From positions 53,940,001 to 54,004,000 of the forward strand of contig CM075983.1 of assembly GCA_038087875.1 (NCBI GenBank): a stretch of 64,000 nt of DNA, given 5' to 3'. This document shows positions 6,111-60,100 of this stretch, piece after piece (position 1 is the first letter of the stretch; each line of letters starts with the position of its first letter). The notes below the pieces were generated by a model, which worked only from the letters and a program-made list of their open reading frames with translations, did not search any database and had not been told where the DNA came from. The translations under genes and the position numbers were made by a program. The DNA is from Malacoraja senta (lineage: Eukaryota).

Positions 6111-9100
6111 CCCCTTTGTTTTTAATGACCGCATCGTTTCCCTGTTTGGTTTTTATATTTTTCTGTTCTCAGGATCAGGCCGGGATATTCCAGCCAAAGA
6201 TAAAGGGGACGTGTGCGAGTAGCGTCAATACTATTTTATCAGCTGACCGTGTAAATTTATCACCACTGTCATATTATAAACTTACAAAGAACTTTAAGGC
6301 ATTGCTGTTGTCTGTATTTTAAACACCCGTTTGTTATTTGCAGATTCTGTTAGCGCTAAAGTTTGTTCTTACGACAACGCGGTCGTTGTGTTCATGAGAA
6401 ACGTGCAATAGAAAATCGTGTTATAAAGACACTCGTGACAATTGGGGAAAGGGGGTTAGGCGCTAGTTTCAGACTTGCTATAACACATTTAACCCCACCC
6501 CGGGTTTTCAAAAGTAAAACATTTTCCAATAACAATATGTTTACTCTTGTTGCAGCAAGCTAAAAATACTAGAGGCTATATGTTACATTGTTTAACCAGA
6601 GTATGATTGTACAGGAGTCAATAGAAATGACACAGCATTATAGTTCCTCTCTACATCAAAATTACTACTTGCCAGTTTCCCAATGGCCATGTGTGGTTAA
6701 AGTAACACCAGTGTTTTGAGAGACAATATGTCTGAGGTTAGGTGGAAACAGTTATTGATATTGTTTTATTGTCACATGTACTACAATATGGAGAAAAGTT
6801 TTGTATGCTATCCAGTCAAATCATACTGTACATGAGTACAATCAAGTCACAAGGTAGTGCAATGAGAAAAGATATCAGTTATTGTAAATACCAGCGTTTA
6901 AGTGTTGTAGCACTACCGCTGCAGAGTAAGTGGAGATACAAAAAAGTACAAAGGCCCTATTAAGATATCTTGGGAGGTCGGTGCTGTGCCCGTCTGTTAC
7001 TAGAGGTTGATCAGTAGGGAAGAAGCTATCCTGAATCCGGTATTATGTGCTTTTAAGGTTTTGTATCTTCTGCCTGATGCAGAGAAGAGGGAATGGTTGG
7101 GGTGTAACTCGTCATAAGGCAACATGAAGTGTAAATGGAGTTGATGTGGGGTAAGCTGGCTTGTGTCATTGCCTGTTTACATGCACAATTCTGCTATTTC
7201 TAAGATCTTGGCCAGAGCTATTGCCAAACCAAGTTGTTATGCACCTAAATAGGATGCTTTCTCCATTGCATCTGAAGTTGATATGGGTCATTGAAGTCAT
7301 GTGAACTTCCTTTGTCTTCTGAGGAAGCAGAGGCATTGGTGCACTTTCTTGCTGTCACGTCAATGTGGTTGGTTCAGGACAAATAGTAACTTGAAACTCT
7401 TGAACATCTCCACTTTGGTATCATTGTGCTGACTGATGCGTATACACCACCTTGTTTCCGGAAGTCAATAGCAAGCTTTGTGTTGTTGATGTTGAGGGAG
7501 GGGTTATTGCTTTGGCGCAATGTTACTAACTGCTGTTTTTTCTTCCTGTATTATGTCTCATCATTGTTTGAGTTCAGGCCCACTATGGTGGTCCCATCTG
7601 TGAACTTGTAAATGGAGTTCCTTTTAAATCTCATCCCAACCCTGGGGAAAAAGACTGTGTATTCACCCTTTCTATGTCCCTCATGATTTTATCCACCTTA
7701 CAATCAATCACACCTCATTTTCTTAAATTATAAAGAATAAAATCCTTGCCTGCCTAACCTTTCTCTGTAAGTCAGGCCATTGAGTCTTGGCAATAATCTT
7801 GTATGTCATCTTTGCGCTCTTTCCAGCTTAATGTTATCTTTACTATAGCAGGGCAACAAAACCGTACTCAGTATTCCAAATATATAATCACAAATGTCGC
7901 GTACAACTGTTACATAATGTCCCAACTCCTATGCTTGACCTGACTAATGTAGGGTAGTGTGCCACATGCCAATGTCACCATTCCTCTCTCCAGAGATGCG
8001 CCAGAGAGTTACTCCTGCATTTTGTGTCTATCTGCCAATTTCACCACCCTGTCTTCCAGTGACACCACCTACAGGGCGATATGTAATTGTACTCCTTGGT
8101 CCATCTATTTACAACACTACCAAGGGTGCTCCTATGAAAGTCTTGCTCTGATTTGACTTCCCAAAGTATAGCACCATGCACTTGTCTGAATTGAATACCA
8201 TTTGCCAGTATTGGCCATTTACCTAGTTGATCATGATCCTGTTGATCATGTTCACCTTCTTCACTATCTACAATACCATCTATTTTTATGTTTCTGCAAA
8301 CTTATTAACTATGCCTTGTACATTCTTCTCCAAATCCTTTACAAAAATGTGCACAGTTCCAATCACAATGGCACCCCACTAATCACAGGCCTCCAGTCTA
8401 AACAAAAACCGTCCACTATCATCCTGTCATCAAGCTAAATGTGTATCCATTGAGCTAACTCTCCCTGGATCCCATGCAATCTAAACCTCCATTCTGCTGT
8501 GTGGGACCTTGGCAAAGGCCTTGCTAGATAATGCCCACAGCCCTGTCCTCATCAAACCTCTTGGTTATCTCTTCAAAAGTCTCAATAGATTTGTGAGACA
8601 TGATTTTCCTTGCACAGCTTAATATTGACTATCCCTAATCAGTTTTTGTCTATCCAAATTCCTGTCCCTCAGAATCCCCTACAGTAACTTCTCTGCCATT
8701 GATGTCAGGCTTGCCATCCTATAGTTGTTTCCTGGCTTGTCTTGCTGGCCCTTCTAAATAGAGGTGCAACATTAACCACCTCTCCAGAACTTCACTTGCA
8801 GCTAAAGATGCAAATATCTCTGCAGGGGCCAGAGGAATTTCTACCCCAGCTTCCCACAAGGTCTAAAGGGCCTTTCCCACTTGGTGATTTTGCTGGCGTT
8901 ATATCAGTGTCGCCAAAAGATTTTGAACATTTCAAAATCTAGCGACACTTGAAAAAACGACACTTGAAAAACCACCATGCGTCATACGTCATATGTCATC
9001 ACGCCATGTATTTTTCAGTGACCTAATATGTCAGTCAATGAAGCCAGCAGTCGCCGAAAAAATCGCCAAGCAGGACAGGCCCTTTAGTATGCACTTGATC

Positions 9101-18100: not shown

Positions 18101-21100
18101 ATTATCTCCCCGGGCCATGGCCTCCTGCCGTGGCTTACACAACGCACACCAGATCTGACCTTCAAGTCAGCTGACAGCAAGGTCAAGATATTAGCATATC
18201 ATTATCATGACTCATCGTCATGACAGTCATCGGCTCGGAGTTCCTTTAGGAAGGAGATAAGAAGGAATTTCTTTAGTCAGAGGGTGGTGAACCTGTGGAA
18301 TTATTTGCCACAGAAGGCTGTGGAGGCCAAGTCAATGGATATTTTTTAAGGCAGAGATAGATAGATTCTTGATTAGTACAGGTGTCGGGGGTTATGGGGA
18401 GAAGGCAGGAGAATGGGATTAGGAGGGAGAGATAGATCAGCCACGATTAAATGGCGGAGTAGACCTGATGGGTCAAATGGTCTAATGCTGCTCCTATCAC
18501 TTATGACCTTATGACCATGAATCTCTTGCATGTTCCTCATGAGACCACTTAACCATGGTAGCCGTTTTCAGTCCACTTTTGCTAAATTGATCCGCAGTCT
18601 ATTGAACTGTGCAAGACATCTTTGTATAGTACCACCGACGGCATCTGACTTGCTCAGTACCCAGTATTTCCTGTTTCATTGTAATTTGTCTGTCTTCCAC
18701 TACCATCCAAATCATGATGCTGGCGAAAATTAGACATTGTTTTGAGGGAAAGAGGAGAAGGAAGAATAACCCATGTTATTGATGTACAGTATGGCAGATC
18801 AAAAGAATATGAATTAATGTTTATTGGCAAAGTATGTACACCTACAAGGAATTTGCCTTGGTGCTCCGCTGCAAGTAACAACACGGCATACATTAAACAA
18901 TTAAGAATAAATCATCAAACATTAAAACATTCAGAATAAAACATTATAGATTAAACATAATAATAATAATAATAATAAGTTTATTTATATAGCACATTTT
19001 CCAATCGATTTAACTCAAAAGCCAAAGTGCTTCACAGTTACTAACCAAACAAATAATAAAAAGAGATAGAAAAAATGACAACACACTATAAGAAATTTTA
19101 CACAAACACGAACATCCCCCCACAGTAGAATCTACACTCTCCACTGTGAGGGAAGGCACTAAAATGTCCAGTCCTCCTCCTCCTCCTAGTCCACCCGAGG
19201 TCGGGGCCAGTCTGAGGCCACTGCAGCCAGTCGCCGCAACGGCAGCCCGATGTTGTTTGCCCACCCGCATCGGGTGGAAAAGTCCTCAGCAGCTTGGAAA
19301 TGTCTGGAGCGGCCGCTCCTTCCCCGGAGACTGCGACGCCCGCGGACTTCAGGTCGCGCCGGTTGGTGCTTCGACTCCGCGGTGTTTTTGATCCAGCGCC
19401 GCCCGCCCGTGGCGGGATGCCCTCAAACCGCAGACCGCAGACCACGGCTGCTCGATGTTGGTGGTCGGCGGTCACAGCACTCCGGAGCGGCGACCCGACA
19501 AGGCATCGCCCGCTCCCTGCTGATGTCCCAGCGCTGTGCCGCCGAAGCTGTGGTCCCCGGCAGGAAACGCCGCTCCAGCCCGATGGAAGGCCGCATGGGG
19601 AGACCGGAGACGCGATTCGGAGGAAAACCGCATCTCCGACCAGGTAGGACTGGGGTTAAACAGTTCCCCCCCCCACATAGAAAGAATAGACTCCAAATAA
19701 TAAAAAAATAAAAAATATTCAAACAATAAAAGAGTTAGACGACGGACTGCAGGCAGGCTGCCATACAAACGGCGCCCACTCCTGCACATCCGCCATCTTG
19801 ATGAAACATGTGAATGAAATAAAATACCAGAGCAAAAGGAGGCTACAGACTTTTGCTTATTGAGTAGAGCTGTTGCTCGTGGAAAAAAGCAGTTTTTATG
19901 TCTGGCTGTGGTGGCTCCAGAGGGGAGTGCTTCAAAGAATTTGTAGCCAGGGTGAGAGGGGTCAGAGATGATCTTGCCCGCTCGCTTCCTGGCCTTTGCA
20001 ATGTGCAATTTGACGATGGGGGGAGGGGGGAAGGTTGCGGCCAACAACCTTCTCAGCTGATCGAATTTGCTGCAGCCTCCGGATGTTGTGCTTGGTGGCT
20101 GAGCCAAGCCAGACCATGATGGAGAAGGTGAGGACAGACTTTACGATGACAGTATAGAATTGGACCATCGTCGCCTGTGGCAGATTGTTTCCTCAGCAGC
20201 CGCAGGAAGTACATCCTCTATTGTGCCTTTTTGACTGGAGTCGATGGTAGCACCCCATTTAAGGTCCTTGGAGATGATGGTTCCAAGGAACTTAAAATAC
20301 TCCACAGATGTGACTGTGGTGTTGTTGATGGTGAGTGGGGGGAGGGGAGGGGAGGGAGAGCTCTCCGAAAGTCTACTATCAATTCCACTGTCTTAAGAGC
20401 ATTGAGCTCCAGGTTGTTGCGAAGGCACCAAGACGCCAGCTGTGCCACTTCCTGTCTGGGCAGATTCCTCCCCATCCTGGATCAGTCCAAGTTGTGTCGT
20501 CCGCAAACTTGCAAAGCTTTACAGAGGAGTTTGTAGAGATTAAGTTGTTCAGCTGGCGCTGGCTTGTAAATGCCACATGACCTGTGGAAATTGGTGAGAA
20601 ACAGTAAATTCTAACCTTCCAAACATATATTTTATTGCCATTGTAATCATTTTTGCCGCTGTCTGTGTTAGTGCAGGAAGATGTCACTTCATATTTATTG
20701 CAGTGATTAAATATGGGTCTTGCGTCCTTTGTGCATACTTTCTCACACTTCGTTTAATAATGTTTTACACCTGTTGCTTGTTAAGACCTGTATTCATTGC
20801 AACAAAGACCTAGAAAAAAAGAATTATATTTGAATAAACTTGAATGACAGTTCAGTTTTTGTATTTCTGTTTTAGTTTTACCAAGGTGAGGACTCGGTTA
20901 GTGTTTGCTGATTCTTGTCAACATTTCTATTCTTGGCAAGTGGAACAATAAGTAGAAGAGGCATTTTTTTATCCTGCCAGTGGGACTGTACATATCCATC
21001 CTTTATCAGTTAGACAATCCTGCATATCAGTGACAAACGTTAGAAAAATGGTTGCTTTTCCATGCTCCTGCCTAGGTCTTCCAGCTATGGAGTTGAATGC

Positions 21101-54100: not shown

Positions 54101-57100
54101 AGAGCAACAGAAGGTAACTGAAGGAGGCAATACGGGGAGAAAAGATGAGGTACAAAAGTAAGCTAGCCAAGAATATAAAGGAGGATCGCAAAAACTTCTT
54201 TAGATATGTAAACAATTAGTTAAGACAAATGTGGGTCCCTTGAAGACAAACAGGTGAATTTATTATGGGGAACAAGGAAATGGCAGAGAAGTTGAACATG
54301 TACTTTGGATCCGTCTTCACTAAGGAAGACACAAACAATTTCTCAGATGTACTAGCGGCCAGAGGACCTAGAGTGACGGAGGAACTGAAGGAAATTCACA
54401 TTAGGCCGGAAATGATGTTGGATAGACTGATGGGACTGAAGGCTGATAAATCCCCAGGGACTGATGGTCTGCATCCTGGGTACTTGAGGTGGCTCTAGAA
54501 ATCGTGGATGCATTGGTGATAATTTTCCAATGTTCTATAGATTCAGTTTCTGTGGATAGGAGGGTAGCTAATGTTATCCCACTTTTAAAGAAAGGAGGGA
54601 AGAGAGAAAACAGGGAATTATAGACCAGTTAGTCTGACATCGGTGGTGGGGAAGATGCTGGAGTCAATCATAAAAGATGAAATAGCGGCACATTTGGATA
54701 GCAGTAACAGGATCGGTCCGAGTCAGCAAGGATTTACGAAGGGGAAATCATGCTTGACTAATCTTCTGGAATTTTTTGAGGATGTAACTAGGAAAATGGA
54801 CAAGGGAGAGCCATTGGATGTAGTGTCCCTGGACTTTCAGTAAGCCTTTGATAAGGACCCTCATTTAAGAACCTTATTCTTAAACTGTGGCCCCTGTTTC
54901 TGGACTCCCCCAACATCGGGAACATGTTTCCTGCCTCTAGCGTGTCCAAACCTTTAACAATCTTATATGTTTCAATGAGATCTCCTCTCATCCTTCTAAA
55001 CTCCAGAGTGTACAAGCCCAGCTGCTCCATTCTCTCAGCATATGACAGTCCCACCATCCCGGGAATTAACCGTGTAAACCTACGCTGCACTCCCTCAATA
55101 GCAAGAATGTCCTTCCTCAAATTAGGGGACCAAAACTGCACACAATACTCCAGGTGTGGTCTCACTAGGGCTCTGTACAACTGCAGAAGGACCTCTTTGC
55201 TCCTATATTCGATTCCTCTTGTTATACAGGCCAACATGCCATTCGCTTTCTTCACTTCCTGCTGTACCTGCATGCTTGCTTTCATAGACTGATGAACAAG
55301 GACCCAGATCCCATTGTACTTCCCCTTTTCCCAACTTGACGCCATTTACATAGTAATCTGCCTTCCTGTTTTTGCTACCAAAGTGGATAACCTCACATTT
55401 ATCACATTAACATTACATTAAATTACTCACATTAAAGGGTGAAGTACAACGGGATCTGGGGGTCCTTGTACATCAGTCACTGAAAGTAAGCATGCAGGTA
55501 CAGCAGGCAGTGAAGAAAGCTATTGGTATGGTGGCCTTCATAACCAGAGGAGTTGAGTATAGGAGCAAAGAGGTCCTTCTGCAGTTGTACAGGGCCTTGG
55601 TAAGACCACACCTGGAGTATTGTGTGCAGTTTTGGTCTTCAAATTTGAGGAAGGACATTCTTGCTATTGAGGGAGTGCAGCGTAGATTCATGAGGTTAAT
55701 TCCGGGGATGACCGGAATGTCGTATGTTGAAAGAATGGAGCAACTGGGCTTGTATAGACTGGAATTTAGAAGGATGAGAGGGGATCATATTGAAACATAA
55801 GATTGTTAAGGGATTGGACACGCTAGAGTTAGGAAACATGTTCCTGATGTTGGCGGAGTGCAGAACCAGGGTCCACAGTTTAAGAGTAAGGGGTAGGCCA
55901 TTTAGAACAGATGAGGAAAACCTTTTTCGCAGATAGTTGTGAATGTGTGGAATTCTCTGCCTCAGAATGCAGTGCAGGCCGATTCTCTAGATGCTTTCAA
56001 GAGATAGATAGAGCACTTAAAGATAGCACTTAAAGATAGAGCACTTAAAGATAGTCAAAGGATATGGGGAGAAGGCTGGAACGGGGTGCTAATTGTGGAT
56101 GATCAGCCATGATCACAGTGAATGGCGGTGCAGGCTCGAAGGGCCGAATGGCCTACTCCTGCACCTATTGTCCATTGTAAAGTATCTCGGTCTGCACTGC
56201 GGCCTAACATCATAATAATAATAATAATAATATCTTTTATTGTCATTGCACGTCAGTGCAACGAGATTTAGTATGCAGCTCCACCGATGTACAAGAAAAG
56301 TAAGATAAATAAATAAGCAAGCAAGCTGAGTGACGTGACCATCCGAGGGAGACTGTCCGGGGGGGGGTGGGGGTGGGTGGGCACTCAGCAGGGCCGGTTC
56401 AGAGCCGCTATAGCTCTTGGAATAAAGCTGTTTCTGAGTCTGGAGGTTCGGGCGTAGAAGGCCTTGTAATGTCTGCCGGAGGGAAGTAGTTCAAACAGTT
56501 CGTTACAAGGGTGTGATGAGTCCTTATGGATGCTGACGGCCTTCCTGAGGCACCGTGTGTGGTAGATGCCCTCCAAGGCTGGTAGCTCTGTCCCAATGAT
56601 CCCCTGCGCTCTGTGAACGACGCGCTGAAGAGCTCTCCTCTCCGCCTCCGTGCAGCTGAGATACCACACAGAGATGCCATACGTTAATATGCTCTCTGGT
56701 GCAGCGGTAGAACATTGTCAGCAGCTGTTGGGGCAGACCAGTCTTTTTTAATGTCCTCAGGAAGAACAGTCGTTGCTGTGCCTTCTTGACCAGCGCAGCG
56801 GTGTTGGTGGACCATGTGAGGTCCTCTGAAATGTGAGTGCCCAGAAACTTAAAGCTGGACACTCTCTCCACACTTTCCCTGTAAATGGAGATTGGGGCGT
56901 ATTCTCCATTATGGGACCTCCTGAAGTCACTAATCAGCTCCTTGGTCTTGGAGGTGTTTAGTGACAAGTTGTTATGAGCGCACCAGTCCGCCAGGTTCTG
57001 CACCTCCGCTCTGTATTTTGTTTCATCACCGTTGGTGATCAGCCCAGATCATGGAGCTGGTGGTCCCTCTCGGGGATCGACCGCCAGTGCTCCAACCGCG

Positions 57101-60100
57101 GGAGCCTGCGGACTTTAGCATCGTGGAGCTCGCGGTTCCTTGATTAGGGACCGACTTCAGGAACTCCAAGCCACAGGAATTTCAACTGCCCTGATCGCGG
57201 GAGCTTCAATCGCTGGTTGCAAGAGCTTCGATCGCCCCGACTGCGGGAGAATAAAGAGGGAAGAAGATTAGACTTTATTGCCTTCCATCACAGTGAGGAA
57301 TGTGGAATCCGCTGTGGTGGATGTTTATGTTAACTTTTATGTAATTGTGTGTCTTGTTGCCTTTTTTAGTATGGCTGTATGGTAATCGAGTTTCACTACC
57401 TTAATTGGTACATGTGACAATAAACAGACCTTTGACCTTTTTGACTTTTGAATTCCTTCATCTAAATCATTGATGTATATTGTAAAAAGCTGCGGTCCCA
57501 GCACCGAGCCTTGTGGCACACTAGTCACTACCTGCCATTCTGAAAGGGACCCATTAATTCCTACCCTTTGTTTCCTGTCTGCCAACCAATTTTCTATCCA
57601 TGTCAATACCCTACCCCCAATGCCATGTGCTCTAATTTTGCCCACTAATCTCCTGTGTGGGACCTTATCAAAGGCTTTCTGAAAGTCCAGATACATTACA
57701 TTCACTGTCTCTTCCTTGTCCTTTACTTGCTACATCCTAAAAAAATCCCAGAAGATTAGTCAAACAAGATTTCCCCTTCATAAATCCATGCTGACTTTGA
57801 CCGATCCTGTTATTGCTATCCAAATACGGCACTATAACATCTTTAATAATTGACTCCATTCGATAGCTAAAATCTGCAATTGCCTCTATCCCAACACATC
57901 TGGCACTTCAAATCATCCTCAATTTATGTTTGACCAAAGTCATCCAAAATGAGGAACTTGATAGATGTTCAGATACAGTTTAATCCCATCAGTAACTTAA
58001 TTGGGTCATACGTTTTTTTCATAAATGTTTATGGTATCATTCAGATCCTTATTAAAATAGTGCAATAATAATAATAATAGATTTTATTTGTATAGCGCTT
58101 TTCAAGGACTCAAAGTCGCTTTACATGGAGAGTCAAGAACAAAACAAAATAGAGCAGTAAGACAGAGATGCAAAGGGGAGGGGGACATGGAACTAAGGGT
58201 ATGCAGAGGTGAAGAGATGGGTCTTGAGGCGGGACTGGAGGATGGTGAGGGACTCAGAATTTCGAATCAATTGTGGGAGGGAGTTCCAGAGCCTGGGAGC
58301 TGCCCTGGAGAAGGCTCTGTTTCCAAAAGTGCAGAGGTTGGATTTCGGAATGGAGAGGAGACAGGCTGATGTGGATCTGAGGGACCGTGAGGGTTGGTAG
58401 GGGGAGAGGAGGTCAGTGAGATAAGGGGGGGCCAAGTGGTTGAGGGCTTTGTAGGTGAGGACCAGGATTTTGTAGATGATCCAGTGGGAAATGGGAAGCC
58501 AGTGAAGTTCTTTGAGAACTGGGGTGATGTGGTGCCAGGATTTGGTGTGGGTGATGAGTCGGGCGGCTGCATTCTGGACCAGTTGGAGTCGGTTGATGTT
58601 GCTGGAATTAATGCCAAAGAGAAGAGAGTTACAGTAGTCCAGTCGGGAGGAGATGAAGGCATGGATGAGTCTTTCAGCAGCGGGGGGTGTGAGAGAGGGT
58701 CTGATTTTGGCAAAGTTGCGGAGGTGAAAAAATGATGTTTTGACAACATGGCAGATGTGAGGCTCAAGGGAGAGGGTTGAGTCAAAGATCACGCCAAGGT
58801 TGCGGGCCTGAGGAGATGGGGAGACAGTGGTGCCGTCAATAGTGAGAGTGGGGTTGTTAATTTTGGTAAGTGTTGATTTGGAGCCAATGAGGAGAAATTC
58901 TGTTTTGTTACTGTTTAATTTAAGGAAGTTGAGTTGCATTCAAGATTTGATGGCTGACAGGCAGGAGTTGATATGGGAGAGAGGGGGTTGGTGGGGGGAC
59001 TTGGTGCTGAGATAGATCTGGGTGTCATCAGCATAGCAATGGAAGTCCAGGTTGAAGTGACGGAGTATATGACCAAGGGGGAGGATGTAGATGATGAAGA
59101 GGAGGGGACCGAGAACGGAGCCTTGGGGAACGCCTTGAGTGACAGTGGCTGTGGCAGAGGTGTGGTTATGGAGAGAGATGAAGTGGGATCGGTTGGAAAG
59201 GTAGGAACGGAGCCATATTAAGTGCAGAACCTTCAATGCCAAGATCTTTAAGTCTGGTAAGCAGGATGTTATGGTTCATGGTATCGAAGGCTGCACTCAG
59301 GTCGAGGAGGATGAGGATGTTGAGGGAACCAGTGTCAGCAGAGGTGAGGAGGTCGTTGAGGACTTTGAGGAGAGCCGTTTCTGTGCTTTGGAGGGGGCGA
59401 AAGCCAGATTGGAGGGGTTCGTATAGGTTGTACGCGAGGAGGTGGGAATGAAGTTGTGACTCGACGATACGCTCCAGGGTTTTTGAAAGAAAGGGGAGGT
59501 TTGAGATAGGGCGGTAGTTGATGAGAGAGGAGGGATCAAGACCAGGTTTCTTTAAGATTGGTGTGACAGCAGCAGTTTTGAAAGCAGAGGGGACAATTCC
59601 TTGGGTCAATGAGGAGCTGAAGAGATTAGTGAGGTAGGGGCAGAGAGCGGGGAGGCAGGACTTCAGCAGGGGAGTGGGGAGAGGGTCAAGGGAGCAGGTA
59701 GTGGGTTTGGAAGAGCTGATGAGTTTGGAGATTTCAGTAGGGGTGACCGGGTCAAACTGGGAGAGGAAGCAGTGTGGAGGAGGGGTAAGGAGGTCAGTGG
59801 AGATGTTGAAAGGAGGGGCCTTGGTAGGTGGTGGAGTAGATGCTGGGGAGTCGGGTACAGGGGATAAAGATTGTTGTGTTCCATTTTACTGAAGCAGCAG
59901 TATGATGTTTGTAAAACAAAGATTGTTGGGTGGGTGGGGGGGGGGACACATGGAGAATACCTCTGATTCTCTTAATAGGCAAAGAATAATTATGCCAAAA
60001 CTACATAATGTATTGGAGGCAAAATGGCTGTTTGAAGTGGCCCCATCAGCACTATTCTACTTTCCACTTTCTCTTTGAGCCCAGCTAGCTTCGTCCCTTA

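What the first reader, a model, noticed from the sequence alone, without database searches (positions are those of the whole stretch)
57260..57335. Covarying RNA hairpin core shared by two retroposons with different LINE tails
Seen: 57284-57321(+) TCCATCACAGTG..CGCTGTGGTGGA and ~19115-19154(-) TTCCCTCACAGTGGA..TCTACTGTGGGGGGA are homologous, with shared flanks (gac..ttt..tgccttcc upstream, gatgtt downstream). Both fold into 12-15-bp stems, and the differences preserve pairing (A-U to C-G, U-G to U-A, G-C to G-U). One element ends in an L2-type tail and the other in a Rex1/Babar-type tail. Known: SINE superfamilies (CORE, V, Deu) are defined by a conserved central domain with exchangeable tails. 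Inference: this may be a new structured central domain defining a modular retroposon superfamily.
Basis: partly seen in the sequence, partly recalled or inferred. Interest (0 to 1): 0.7.

Follow-up and report, generated by a model that had tools for sequence, protein, structure and literature searches.

The report
Conserved hairpin core of tail-swapping retroposons
The stretch is the best-kept part, a small RNA hairpin, of an abundant gene-less jumping element of skates that occurs here with the tails of two different helper LINEs; it is a real but modestly novel form of a familiar genomic parasite, and what the hairpin does is not shown.

Summary
57284-57321(+) and 19115-19154(-) are homologous (about 80% over about 95 nt, blastn E 5e-8) and are the only two copies in the window. 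Both fold on the sense strand, and every difference in the stem keeps pairing. With two sequences that is suggestive, not proof.

Copy A (57046-57446) is a 5'-truncated 401-bp insert inside an L2 ORF. Copy B (19799-18959) is a complete 841-bp insert in an L2 3'UTR, with a 10-bp target duplication and a YY1-like first ten bases. Both share one layout:
- an undepleted CpG-rich body;
- a purine tract;
- the hairpin core;
- a U-rich spacer with a T6 run;
- a LINE tail.

A's tail matches an L2 3' end in the window. B's tail matches a Rex1/Babar-like LINE 3' end in the window. The core is absent from those LINE 3'UTRs.

There is no tRNA, 5S or 7SL head, and internal T runs argue against Pol III, so these are not SINEs in the strict sense. 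Raw reads pile highest on the hairpin, on the order of 10^4 copies, and contigs from other species carry it.

Genome-wide covariation and comparison with Dfam or Repbase could not be done. Earlier notes of this scan describe the same kind of element elsewhere in this genome.

The parts
57046..57446 (+). Element A: a 5'-truncated 401-bp copy of an ORF-less retroposon, inserted into a minus-strand L2 LINE
   Evidence: The family consensus of the flanking L2 resumes right after 57045 and right before 57447 (loose ends). The L2 ORF pieces lie on both sides.
57046..57233 (+). CpG-rich body made of degenerate repeats that vary in number between copies
   Evidence: GC is 0.59 and CpG o/e 0.92 for 57046-57259. 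Direct repeats are spaced 46, 72 and 99 nt apart. Many contig joints skip 80-115 nt or go back about 40 nt.
57234..57326 (+). Conserved core shared with element B
   Evidence: The local alignment scores z 25. Read depth is highest here. No listed variant in the reads outnumbers this copy's letter between 57223 and 57343 (with 163 rows hidden).
57284..57321 (+). Sense-strand hairpin. Pairs are 57284-57294 with 57311-57321, then 57297-57299 with 57308-57310; the loop is 57300-57307
   Evidence: About 20% of reads carry two extra G in the loop.
57322..57367 (+). U-rich spacer ending in a T6 run (57362-57367)
   Evidence: Similarity to B in this stretch is not significant.
57368..57446 (+). L2-type 3' tail. 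Its own stem-loop (57394-57416) has lost 2 nt in this copy
   Evidence: It matches 21 of 23 positions of the 3' end of the L2 LINE at 6763-7030(-), z 5.4, 0 of 1000 shuffles. 71% of reads have TG inserted after 57396, which restores the stem.
18959..19799 (-). Element B: a complete 841-bp copy of a sister family, inserted in the 3'UTR of an L2 LINE
   Evidence: Target duplication at 19800-19809 and 18949-18958, 9 of 10 identical. The L2 ORF end lies upstream, and an L2-type tail follows downstream at about 18840-18900.
19790..19799 (-). YY1-like motif (AAGATGGCGG) forming the first ten bases of B
   Evidence: The border is fixed by the target duplication.
19208..19679 (-). CpG-island-like body of B
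   Evidence: GC 0.66 and CpG o/e 0.97, against 0.44 for the window.
19110..19207 (-). Conserved core of B
19115..19154 (-). Hairpin of B: 16 pairs in the minimum-free-energy fold
   Evidence: -28.4 kcal/mol, z -4.0.
18975..19072 (-). Rex1/Babar-like LINE tail of B, followed by (ATT)n at 18957-18978
   Evidence: 87% over 39 nt (E 2e-7) to the 3' end of the LINE at 58063-59609(-). A colinear alignment of about 95 nt scores z 3.7, 2 of 1000 shuffles.
58063..59609 (-). Rex1/Babar-like LINE fragment (RT ORFs, about 110-nt 3'UTR, (ATT)n). It is the reference for B's tail and has no core hairpin
6763..7030 (-). L2 LINE 3' end (ORF2 C-terminus with SFFP, 3'UTR and tail). It is the reference for A's tail and has no core hairpin

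Best explanation
The stretch is the most conserved segment of an abundant, ORF-less, LINE-dependent retroposon lineage of a skate-like genome.

The layout, from 5' to 3', is:
- a YY1-like first ten bases (seen only in the complete copy B);
- a CpG-island-like body whose degenerate repeats vary in number between copies;
- a purine tract;
- a core of about 95 nt holding a 14-16-bp sense-strand hairpin;
- a U-rich spacer with a T6 run;
- a LINE-derived 3' tail.

The two copies in the window belong to sister families that kept the core but carry tails of different helpers: L2 for A, a Rex1/Babar-like LINE for B.

Inferred mechanism:
1. The element is transcribed by RNA polymerase II from its own CpG-rich head.
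2. The helper LINE's reverse transcriptase recognises the tail and copies the RNA into the genome by target-primed reverse transcription.
3. The hairpin lies outside the tail and survived a change of helper, so it most likely serves a step that does not depend on the helper, such as RNA stability or RNP assembly, and is kept by selection among source copies.

Shown: the homology, the fold, the element borders, the tail assignments, the abundance, and the absence of a Pol III head. Inferred: Pol II transcription, the role of the tails, and any function of the hairpin.
For: - Homology and fold.
- Pairing kept through 4-6 differences with none broken. P = 0.002-0.07 under random substitution.
- Sense-strand bias: G-U pairs make the sense fold 3.5 (A) to 12 (B) kcal/mol better than the antisense fold.
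- Borders of A come from the loose ends of the flanking L2 family. Borders of B come from a 9-of-10 target duplication and the split L2 3'UTR.
- Tails.
- The core is absent from three L2 3'UTRs and the Rex1-like 3'UTR in the window.
- The core is more alike than its surroundings: z 25, against 3.7 for the body, 0.2 for the spacer and 3.4 for the tail.
- Raw-read depth is about 8,000 on the hairpin, about 3,700 on the tail and 450-1,000 on the body.
- Contigs of two other coded organisms cover 57234-57435 at about 90%.
- No Rfam family and no tRNA.
- CpG o/e is 0.92-0.97 in both bodies.
- The concepts of bipartite non-autonomous LINEs and tail exchange come from PMC5786205. Repeat arrays near the 5'UTR of CR1-group LINEs and high Rex1 coverage in rays come from PMC13343379.
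Against: - Only two sequences could be aligned, so covariation is statistically weak and the structure was chosen on the same data.
- The depth peak may partly be an artefact. The body has variable repeat numbers and a length-variable purine tract, and this copy has private deletions in the tail (after 57385 and 57396). Both of these clip read alignments.
- The core is CpG-poor (o/e 0.33-0.49) while the body is CpG-rich, so part of the contrast in conservation could be mutational.
- No transcript evidence: the runs guessed to be RNA are contigs of unknown nature.
- An autonomous LINE that carries the core in its UTR may exist outside this window.
Confidence: 0.65

Rival explanations
1. The core is a piece of an autonomous LINE, from its 5'UTR end or its 3'UTR start. 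A and B would then be internally deleted, bipartite derivatives of LINEs, and the hairpin would be a LINE UTR element rather than a retroposon-specific domain.
For: - B has the layout expected of a bipartite non-autonomous LINE: a Pol II-like start, no ORF and a LINE tail (concept from PMC5786205).
- CR1-group LINEs can carry repeat arrays near the 5'UTR (PMC13343379).
- B's spacer at 19062-19100 resembles the proximal 3'UTR of the L2 at 6934-6972: 31 of 39 positions, z 6.2, 1 of 500 shuffles, one of six tests.
Against: - No similarity of the core to the ORF ends or 3'UTRs of three L2 copies, or to the Rex1-like 3'UTR.
- No LINE in the window carries the body or the core.
- The same core sits in front of tails of two different LINE types.
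Confidence: 0.25
2. The hairpin has no function. The core merely looks conserved because the body decays fast through CpG loss and repeat slippage and the tail was replaced, and the pair-preserving differences are luck.
For: - Bodies are CpG-rich and the core is CpG-poor.
- This copy's differences from the read majority in the body are mostly C-to-T or G-to-A type.
- There are only one or two double changes.
- P is as high as 0.07 under a strong transition bias.
Against: - All 4-6 stem differences keep pairing, while the loop and bulge differ at 4 of 10 positions.
- The G-U bias favours the transcribed strand.
- None of the four runs lists a variant that outnumbers this copy's letter in 57223-57343, whereas the tail lists four such positions in 89 nt (with hidden rows as a caveat).
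Confidence: 0.25
3. It is a new central domain of a true Pol III SINE superfamily, comparable with the CORE, V, Deu or Meta domains.
For: A shared central segment with exchangeable LINE tails is the defining pattern of SINE superfamilies (PMC4824008; PMC5786205).
Against: - No tRNA, 5S or 7SL-like head.
- T6 and T7 runs near B's 5' end, and a T6 run between the hairpin and the tail in both elements, would stop Pol III.
- The complete copy is 841 bp.
- No hits outside related organisms.
Confidence: 0.07
4. The hairpin is a precursor of a small RNA (miRNA-like).
For: Chimaera SINEs have been linked to miRNA biogenesis (abstract of PMC5499810).
Against: The stems have 14-16 pairs with 8-nt loops. 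From general knowledge of miRNA biogenesis, not tested here, that is far shorter than the roughly 33-bp stems Drosha needs. No small-RNA data could be examined.
Confidence: 0.03

Closest known systems
SINE superfamilies with a highly conserved central domain (CORE, V, Deu, Meta; PMC4824008, PMC5499810)
   Same: A conserved middle segment is shared by families that otherwise differ, and it is combined with 3' tails taken from different LINE partners.
   Different: There is no Pol III head, and internal T runs are present. Length is 0.4-0.85 kb with a CpG-island-like repeat body. Conservation is shown only within one genome and related species. Sequence comparison with the known domains could not be run here.
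Bipartite ORF-less non-autonomous LINEs and their tail exchange (Kojima 2018, PMC5786205)
   Same: ORF-less, presumably Pol II-transcribed, ending in the 3' end of an autonomous LINE. Tail exchange is a documented process.
   Different: That paper reports such derivatives only for the RTE, Ingi, Vingi and R2 clades, whereas the tails here are L2 and Rex1/Babar-like. Identity of the 5' part with a LINE 5'UTR could not be tested.
   Same: A short RNA hairpin in the 3' part of a retroposon RNA.
   Different: Those hairpins sit in the LINE-derived terminal 30-60 nt next to the terminal repeats. This hairpin lies 125-137 nt from the 3' end, outside the LINE-derived part. The tail has its own stem-loop (57394-57416, with family majority CAC-TG-TACC).
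SVA-type composite retroposons of hominids; comparison from general knowledge
   Same: Non-coding, Pol II-type, with a GC-rich variable repeat body, mobilised by a LINE.
   Different: There is no sequence relation. The tails are specific LINE 3' ends rather than poly(A), and the helpers are L2 and Rex1 rather than L1.

Membership tests
SINE superfamily (HCD-SINE) | 5' head derived from tRNA, 5S or 7SL RNA with a Pol III promoter | tested here: not met
   ARAGORN finds nothing in the window. Rfam gives nothing at gathering or E-value thresholds. T6 and T7 runs lie within 100 nt of B's start.
SINE superfamily (HCD-SINE) | Central domain conserved between families whose other parts differ | tested here: met
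   The core scores z 25, against 3.7 for the body, 0.2 for the spacer and 3.4 for the tail. Only two families were compared.
SINE superfamily (HCD-SINE) | Domain shared across distant taxa | tested here: inconclusive
   Contigs of two other coded organisms carry it at about 90%, but their taxa are unknown. The metagenome, viral and prokaryote scans gave one chance hit or none.
SINE superfamily (HCD-SINE) | 3' tail derived from a partner LINE | tested here: met
   A against the L2 3' end: 21 of 23, z 5.4. B against the Rex1-like LINE 3' end: 87% over 39 nt, and about 95 nt colinear.
Bipartite ORF-less non-autonomous LINE | No protein-coding capacity | tested here: met
   Only short ORFs that are not conserved. 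The gaps between A and B in the core are 2, 2 and 1 nt. Word searches with the translated frames found nothing.
Bipartite ORF-less non-autonomous LINE | 3' part identical to the 3' end of the parent LINE | tested here: met
Bipartite ORF-less non-autonomous LINE | 5' part identical to the 5'UTR of the parent LINE | not testable with these tools
   The window holds no full-length L2 or Rex1 5' end, and no eukaryote genome collection could be searched.
LINE 3' recognition stem-loop (stringent type) | The hairpin lies in the LINE-derived terminal tail and is present in the partner LINE | tested here: not met
   The hairpin ends 125 nt (A) and 137 nt (B) from the 3' end. It is absent from four LINE 3'UTRs in the window.

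The most novel reading that the evidence does not exclude
The hairpin core is a functional RNA module that does not depend on the helper LINE. It lets a Pol II-transcribed, gene-less retroposon lineage of cartilaginous fishes move between helpers of different LINE groups (L2 and Rex1). That would be a conserved-domain 'superfamily' outside the Pol III SINEs, with a structured rather than merely sequence-conserved domain.
Probability: 0.25. Interest if true: 0.6.

Novelty: new variant of a known kind. Interest (0 to 1): 0.4.

Why it matters
The origin and role of the conserved middle parts of non-autonomous retroposons are an open question (PMC5786205). Here the conserved part is a small hairpin with pair-preserving changes. 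It sits outside the LINE-derived tail and was kept while the tail changed from one LINE group to another. That gives a concrete element to test: unpair the stem and then restore it. If it is functional, it would point to a step in retroposon RNA biology that is independent of the helper's reverse transcriptase. If it is not, the case shows how CpG content and tail swapping can mimic a conserved domain.

Tried and rejected
- **More copies through spurious ORFs.** Word searches with translated frames of B and A found nothing, so this route to other genomic copies failed.
- **Pattern scans.** The viral contig scan gave 0 hits. The metagenome scan gave 1 hit, L001, a GC-rich bacterial-looking contig with no flank similarity, which is the number expected by chance. 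The prokaryote genome scan gave 0 hits.
- **Covariance model.** A model built from the two copies found no third copy in the window with filters off.
- **Rfam and ARAGORN.** Nothing.
- **Literature search with six 14-19-mers of the core and tails.** One unrelated human primer paper. No supplementary files are held for the two SINE papers.
- **Coding reading** (both hairpins share a frame, AFHHSEEC and AFPHSGEC). Rejected, because the gaps between A and B are not multiples of three and a +GG variant in the loop occurs in about 20% of reads.
- **B as the 3'UTR of the adjacent L2.** Rejected, because of the target duplication and because the L2 3'UTR and tail continue downstream of B.
- **Monomer structure in B's body.** Not significant, z 1.3.
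- **Long-range pairing of the purine tract with the U-rich tracts around the hairpin.** It appears in both minimum-free-energy folds, but the whole-region z scores are only -1.8 and -1.4.
- **The CACAGTG in the stem equals the V(D)J heptamer.** No nonamer at 12 or 23 nt was seen on reading the sequence, so I take it as coincidence.
- **Covariation from reads.** Minor stem variants were among the 163 hidden rows, so this could not be assessed.
Full report
**Observation**

- blastn inside the window aligns the two regions at 75% over 76-103 nt, E about 5e-8.
- A local alignment of the ~95-nt core (57234-57326 against 19207-19110) scores z 25 against shuffles.
- A covariance model of the two copies, run with filters off, finds no third copy in the 64 kb.

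Both sequences fold into the hairpin as their minimum-free-energy structure. A gives -20.0 kcal/mol (z -2.6) and B gives -28.4 kcal/mol (z -4.0). The opposite strands reach only -16.5 kcal/mol, because the G-U pairs become A-C. That asymmetry points to an RNA structure on the strand that carries the LINE-type tails.

**Pairing**

On a 12-pair stem, 8 pairs are invariant, 3 differ on one side and 1 differs on both sides (A-U against C-G). None is broken, and sliding the partner by 1-3 columns drops pairing to 42-70%. RNAalifold prefers 11+3 pairs with a 2-nt bulge, which gives two double changes, two one-sided changes and none broken.

My simulation gives P = 0.014-0.078 that four random substitutions keep all pairs of the 12-pair stem. 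For six substitutions in the 14-pair structure it gives 0.002-0.020. The structure was chosen on the same two sequences, and the shuffle control cannot discriminate with two rows (260 of 500). I therefore call the covariation suggestive, not established.

**Anatomy of A**

Reads and contigs laid on 56900-57600 show that the family consensus of the flanking minus-strand L2 LINE resumes immediately after 57045 and immediately before 57447. The overhanging consensus encodes the KFADDT motif on both sides.
- A is therefore a 401-bp insert (57046-57446) inside an L2 reverse-transcriptase ORF, whose pieces appear. About 40 bp of the target were lost.
- A starts inside one of its own degenerate repeat units (57048-57068 resembles 57120-57140 at 81%), so it is 5'-truncated.
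- The body has repeats spaced 46, 72 and 99 nt apart. Many contigs skip 80-115 nt or go back about 40 nt there, so the number of units varies between copies.

**Anatomy of B**

Upstream of B lies an L2 ORF2 end (KFADDTT ... [10 protein letters not shown]). At first this suggested that the hairpin sits in that LINE's 3'UTR. It does not.
- A 10-bp duplication with one mismatch flanks B (19800-19809 and 18949-18958).
- Downstream of B the L2 3'UTR continues to an L2-type tail near 18840-18900.

B is therefore a complete 841-bp insertion (19799-18959). Its first ten bases are AAGATGGCGG, a YY1-like motif. T6 and T7 runs follow within 100 nt.

**Shared layout**

Both elements have the same order of parts:
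- a GC-rich body with undepleted CpG (o/e 0.92 and 0.97, against 0.44 for the window);
- a purine tract;
- GAC..TTTA..TGCCTTCC;
- the hairpin;
- GGATGTT;
- a U-rich spacer with a T6 run 37-41 nt after the hairpin;
- the tail.

Outside the core the similarity is marginal: z 3.7 for the body, 0.2 for the spacer and 3.4 for the last ~27 nt of the tail.

**Tails**

| Element | Reference LINE in the window | Match |
|---|---|---|
| A | L2 at 6763-7030(-), with an SFFP-type ORF2 C-terminus | 21 of 23 positions, z 5.4, 0 of 1000 shuffles |
| B | LINE at 58063-59609(-), whose RT and C-terminus differ from the L2 type | 87% over 39 nt, E 2e-7; about 95 nt colinear, z 3.7 |

- For A, 71% of reads carry TG after 57396. 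This restores a 9-bp stem-loop just before ACAATAAA, so the tail has its own hairpin.
- I call B's reference LINE Rex1/Babar-like from my recollection of that group's hallmarks. This was not tested by phylogeny.
- A's tail against the Rex1-like 3'UTR is not significant (z 0.6).
- The core shows no similarity to three L2 ORF-end and 3'UTR regions, or to the Rex1-like 3'UTR.

**Not a Pol III SINE**

ARAGORN finds no tRNA-like sequence in the window. Rfam finds nothing at gathering threshold, and nothing meaningful at E-values up to 5 on either element. The internal T runs and the 841-bp length also argue against Pol III. The gaps between A and B in the core are 2, 2 and 1 nt, so the shared reading frame across the hairpin is not coding.

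**Abundance and spread**

In about 1.94 Gb of raw DNA reads (run X21), counting reads at least 80% alike, summed depth runs as follows:

| Interval | Summed depth |
|---|---|
| 57044-57091 | about 170 |
| 57092-57259 (body) | 450-1,900 |
| 57260-57283 | about 5,350 |
| 57284-57331 (hairpin) | 7,900-8,200 |
| 57332-57355 | about 6,500 |
| 57380-57427 | about 3,700 |

- For a genome of 2.5-3.5 Gb (assumed, not known), the hairpin depth corresponds to roughly 10,000-14,000 copies of the core.
- The peak fits a core shared by several families, but part of it is technical. Variable repeat number, a length-variable purine tract and this copy's own tail deletions all clip read alignments.
- None of the four runs lists a variant that outnumbers this copy's letter between 57223 and 57343. 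Twelve such positions are listed in 57083-57222 and four in 57344-57432. The caveat is that 163 rows were hidden.
- About 20% of reads have two extra G in the loop.
- Contigs of two other coded organisms cover 57234-57435 at about 90%. Those runs are only guessed to be RNA, so I claim no expression.

**Interpretation**

The data fit an ORF-less, probably Pol II-transcribed retroposon lineage that borrows the reverse transcriptase of L2 or Rex1-type LINEs through an exchangeable tail.

The concepts are known:
- conserved SINE bodies with exchangeable tails (PMC4824008, PMC5499810);
- bipartite non-autonomous LINEs and tail exchange (PMC5786205);
- repeat arrays near the 5'UTR of CR1-group LINEs, and high Rex1 coverage in rays (PMC13343379).

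What differs here is the combination of four things: no small-RNA head, a CpG-island-like repeat body, tails from L2 and Rex1 (groups for which PMC5786205 reports no bipartite ORF-less derivatives), and a conserved domain that is a discrete hairpin.

Whether the core comes from an unsampled LINE UTR could not be tested. One hint is that B's spacer (19062-19100) resembles the proximal 3'UTR of the L2 at 6934-6972 (31 of 39, z 6.2, one of six tests). That would fit an older L2-derived tail remnant in front of a newer Rex1 tail.

The function of the hairpin is inferred only. It lies outside the helper-derived part and was kept across a change of helper, so a helper-independent role in the element's RNA is the most economical guess.

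**Earlier notes of this scan**

Notes s1-206930, s1-140178, s1-178004 and s1-140483 describe the same kind of 0.7-1.0-kb gene-less skate retroposon with swappable LINE tails on other DNA of this genome. One follow-up also found the hairpin conserved but not shown to covary. They agree with my reading but are not independent evidence.

Note s1-207030 covers element B in this window. I confirm its 5' end and its CpG-rich body, but I find its tail Rex1-like rather than L2-type.

**What could not be done**

- Genome-wide collection of copies.
- Comparison with Dfam, Repbase and SINEBase.
- Small-RNA or CAGE data.
- A read profile for B.

Noticed in passing
window 56233-57045 and 57447-57705 (-): An L2-type LINE split by element A. 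The read-family consensus shows that about 40 bp around the KFADDT motif were lost at the insertion site. The two halves differ about tenfold in read depth.
   Followed up: partly
window 19062-19100 (-) and 6934-6972 (-): B's spacer after the hairpin resembles the proximal 3'UTR of an L2 LINE (31 of 39, z 6.2, 1 of 500 dinucleotide shuffles, one of six tests). It may be a remnant of an older L2 tail in front of the Rex1-type tail.
   Followed up: partly
window 57362-57367 (+) and 19073-19078 (-): A T6 run sits at nearly the same distance after the hairpin in both elements: 41 nt in A and 37 nt in B.
   Followed up: no
window 57252-57269 (+) and 19172-19190 (-): In both minimum-free-energy folds, the purine-rich tract before the hairpin pairs with a downstream U/C-rich tract, enclosing the hairpin. 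The whole-region z scores are not significant (-1.8 and -1.4).
   Followed up: partly
window 58063-59609 (-): A Rex1/Babar-like LINE fragment with 248-aa and 147-aa ORF pieces, a 3'UTR of about 110 nt and an (ATT)n end. The clade assignment rests on recollection only.
   Followed up: partly
window 55800-56160 (+): Another very common cartilaginous-fish repeat lies next to the L2 3' end and its (ATA)n microsatellite at 56209-56232. It was not analysed.
   Followed up: no
L001:327-362 (-): The only metagenome contig that matches the core pattern is GC-rich and looks bacterial, with no flank similarity. I take it as the single hit expected by chance.
   Followed up: yes
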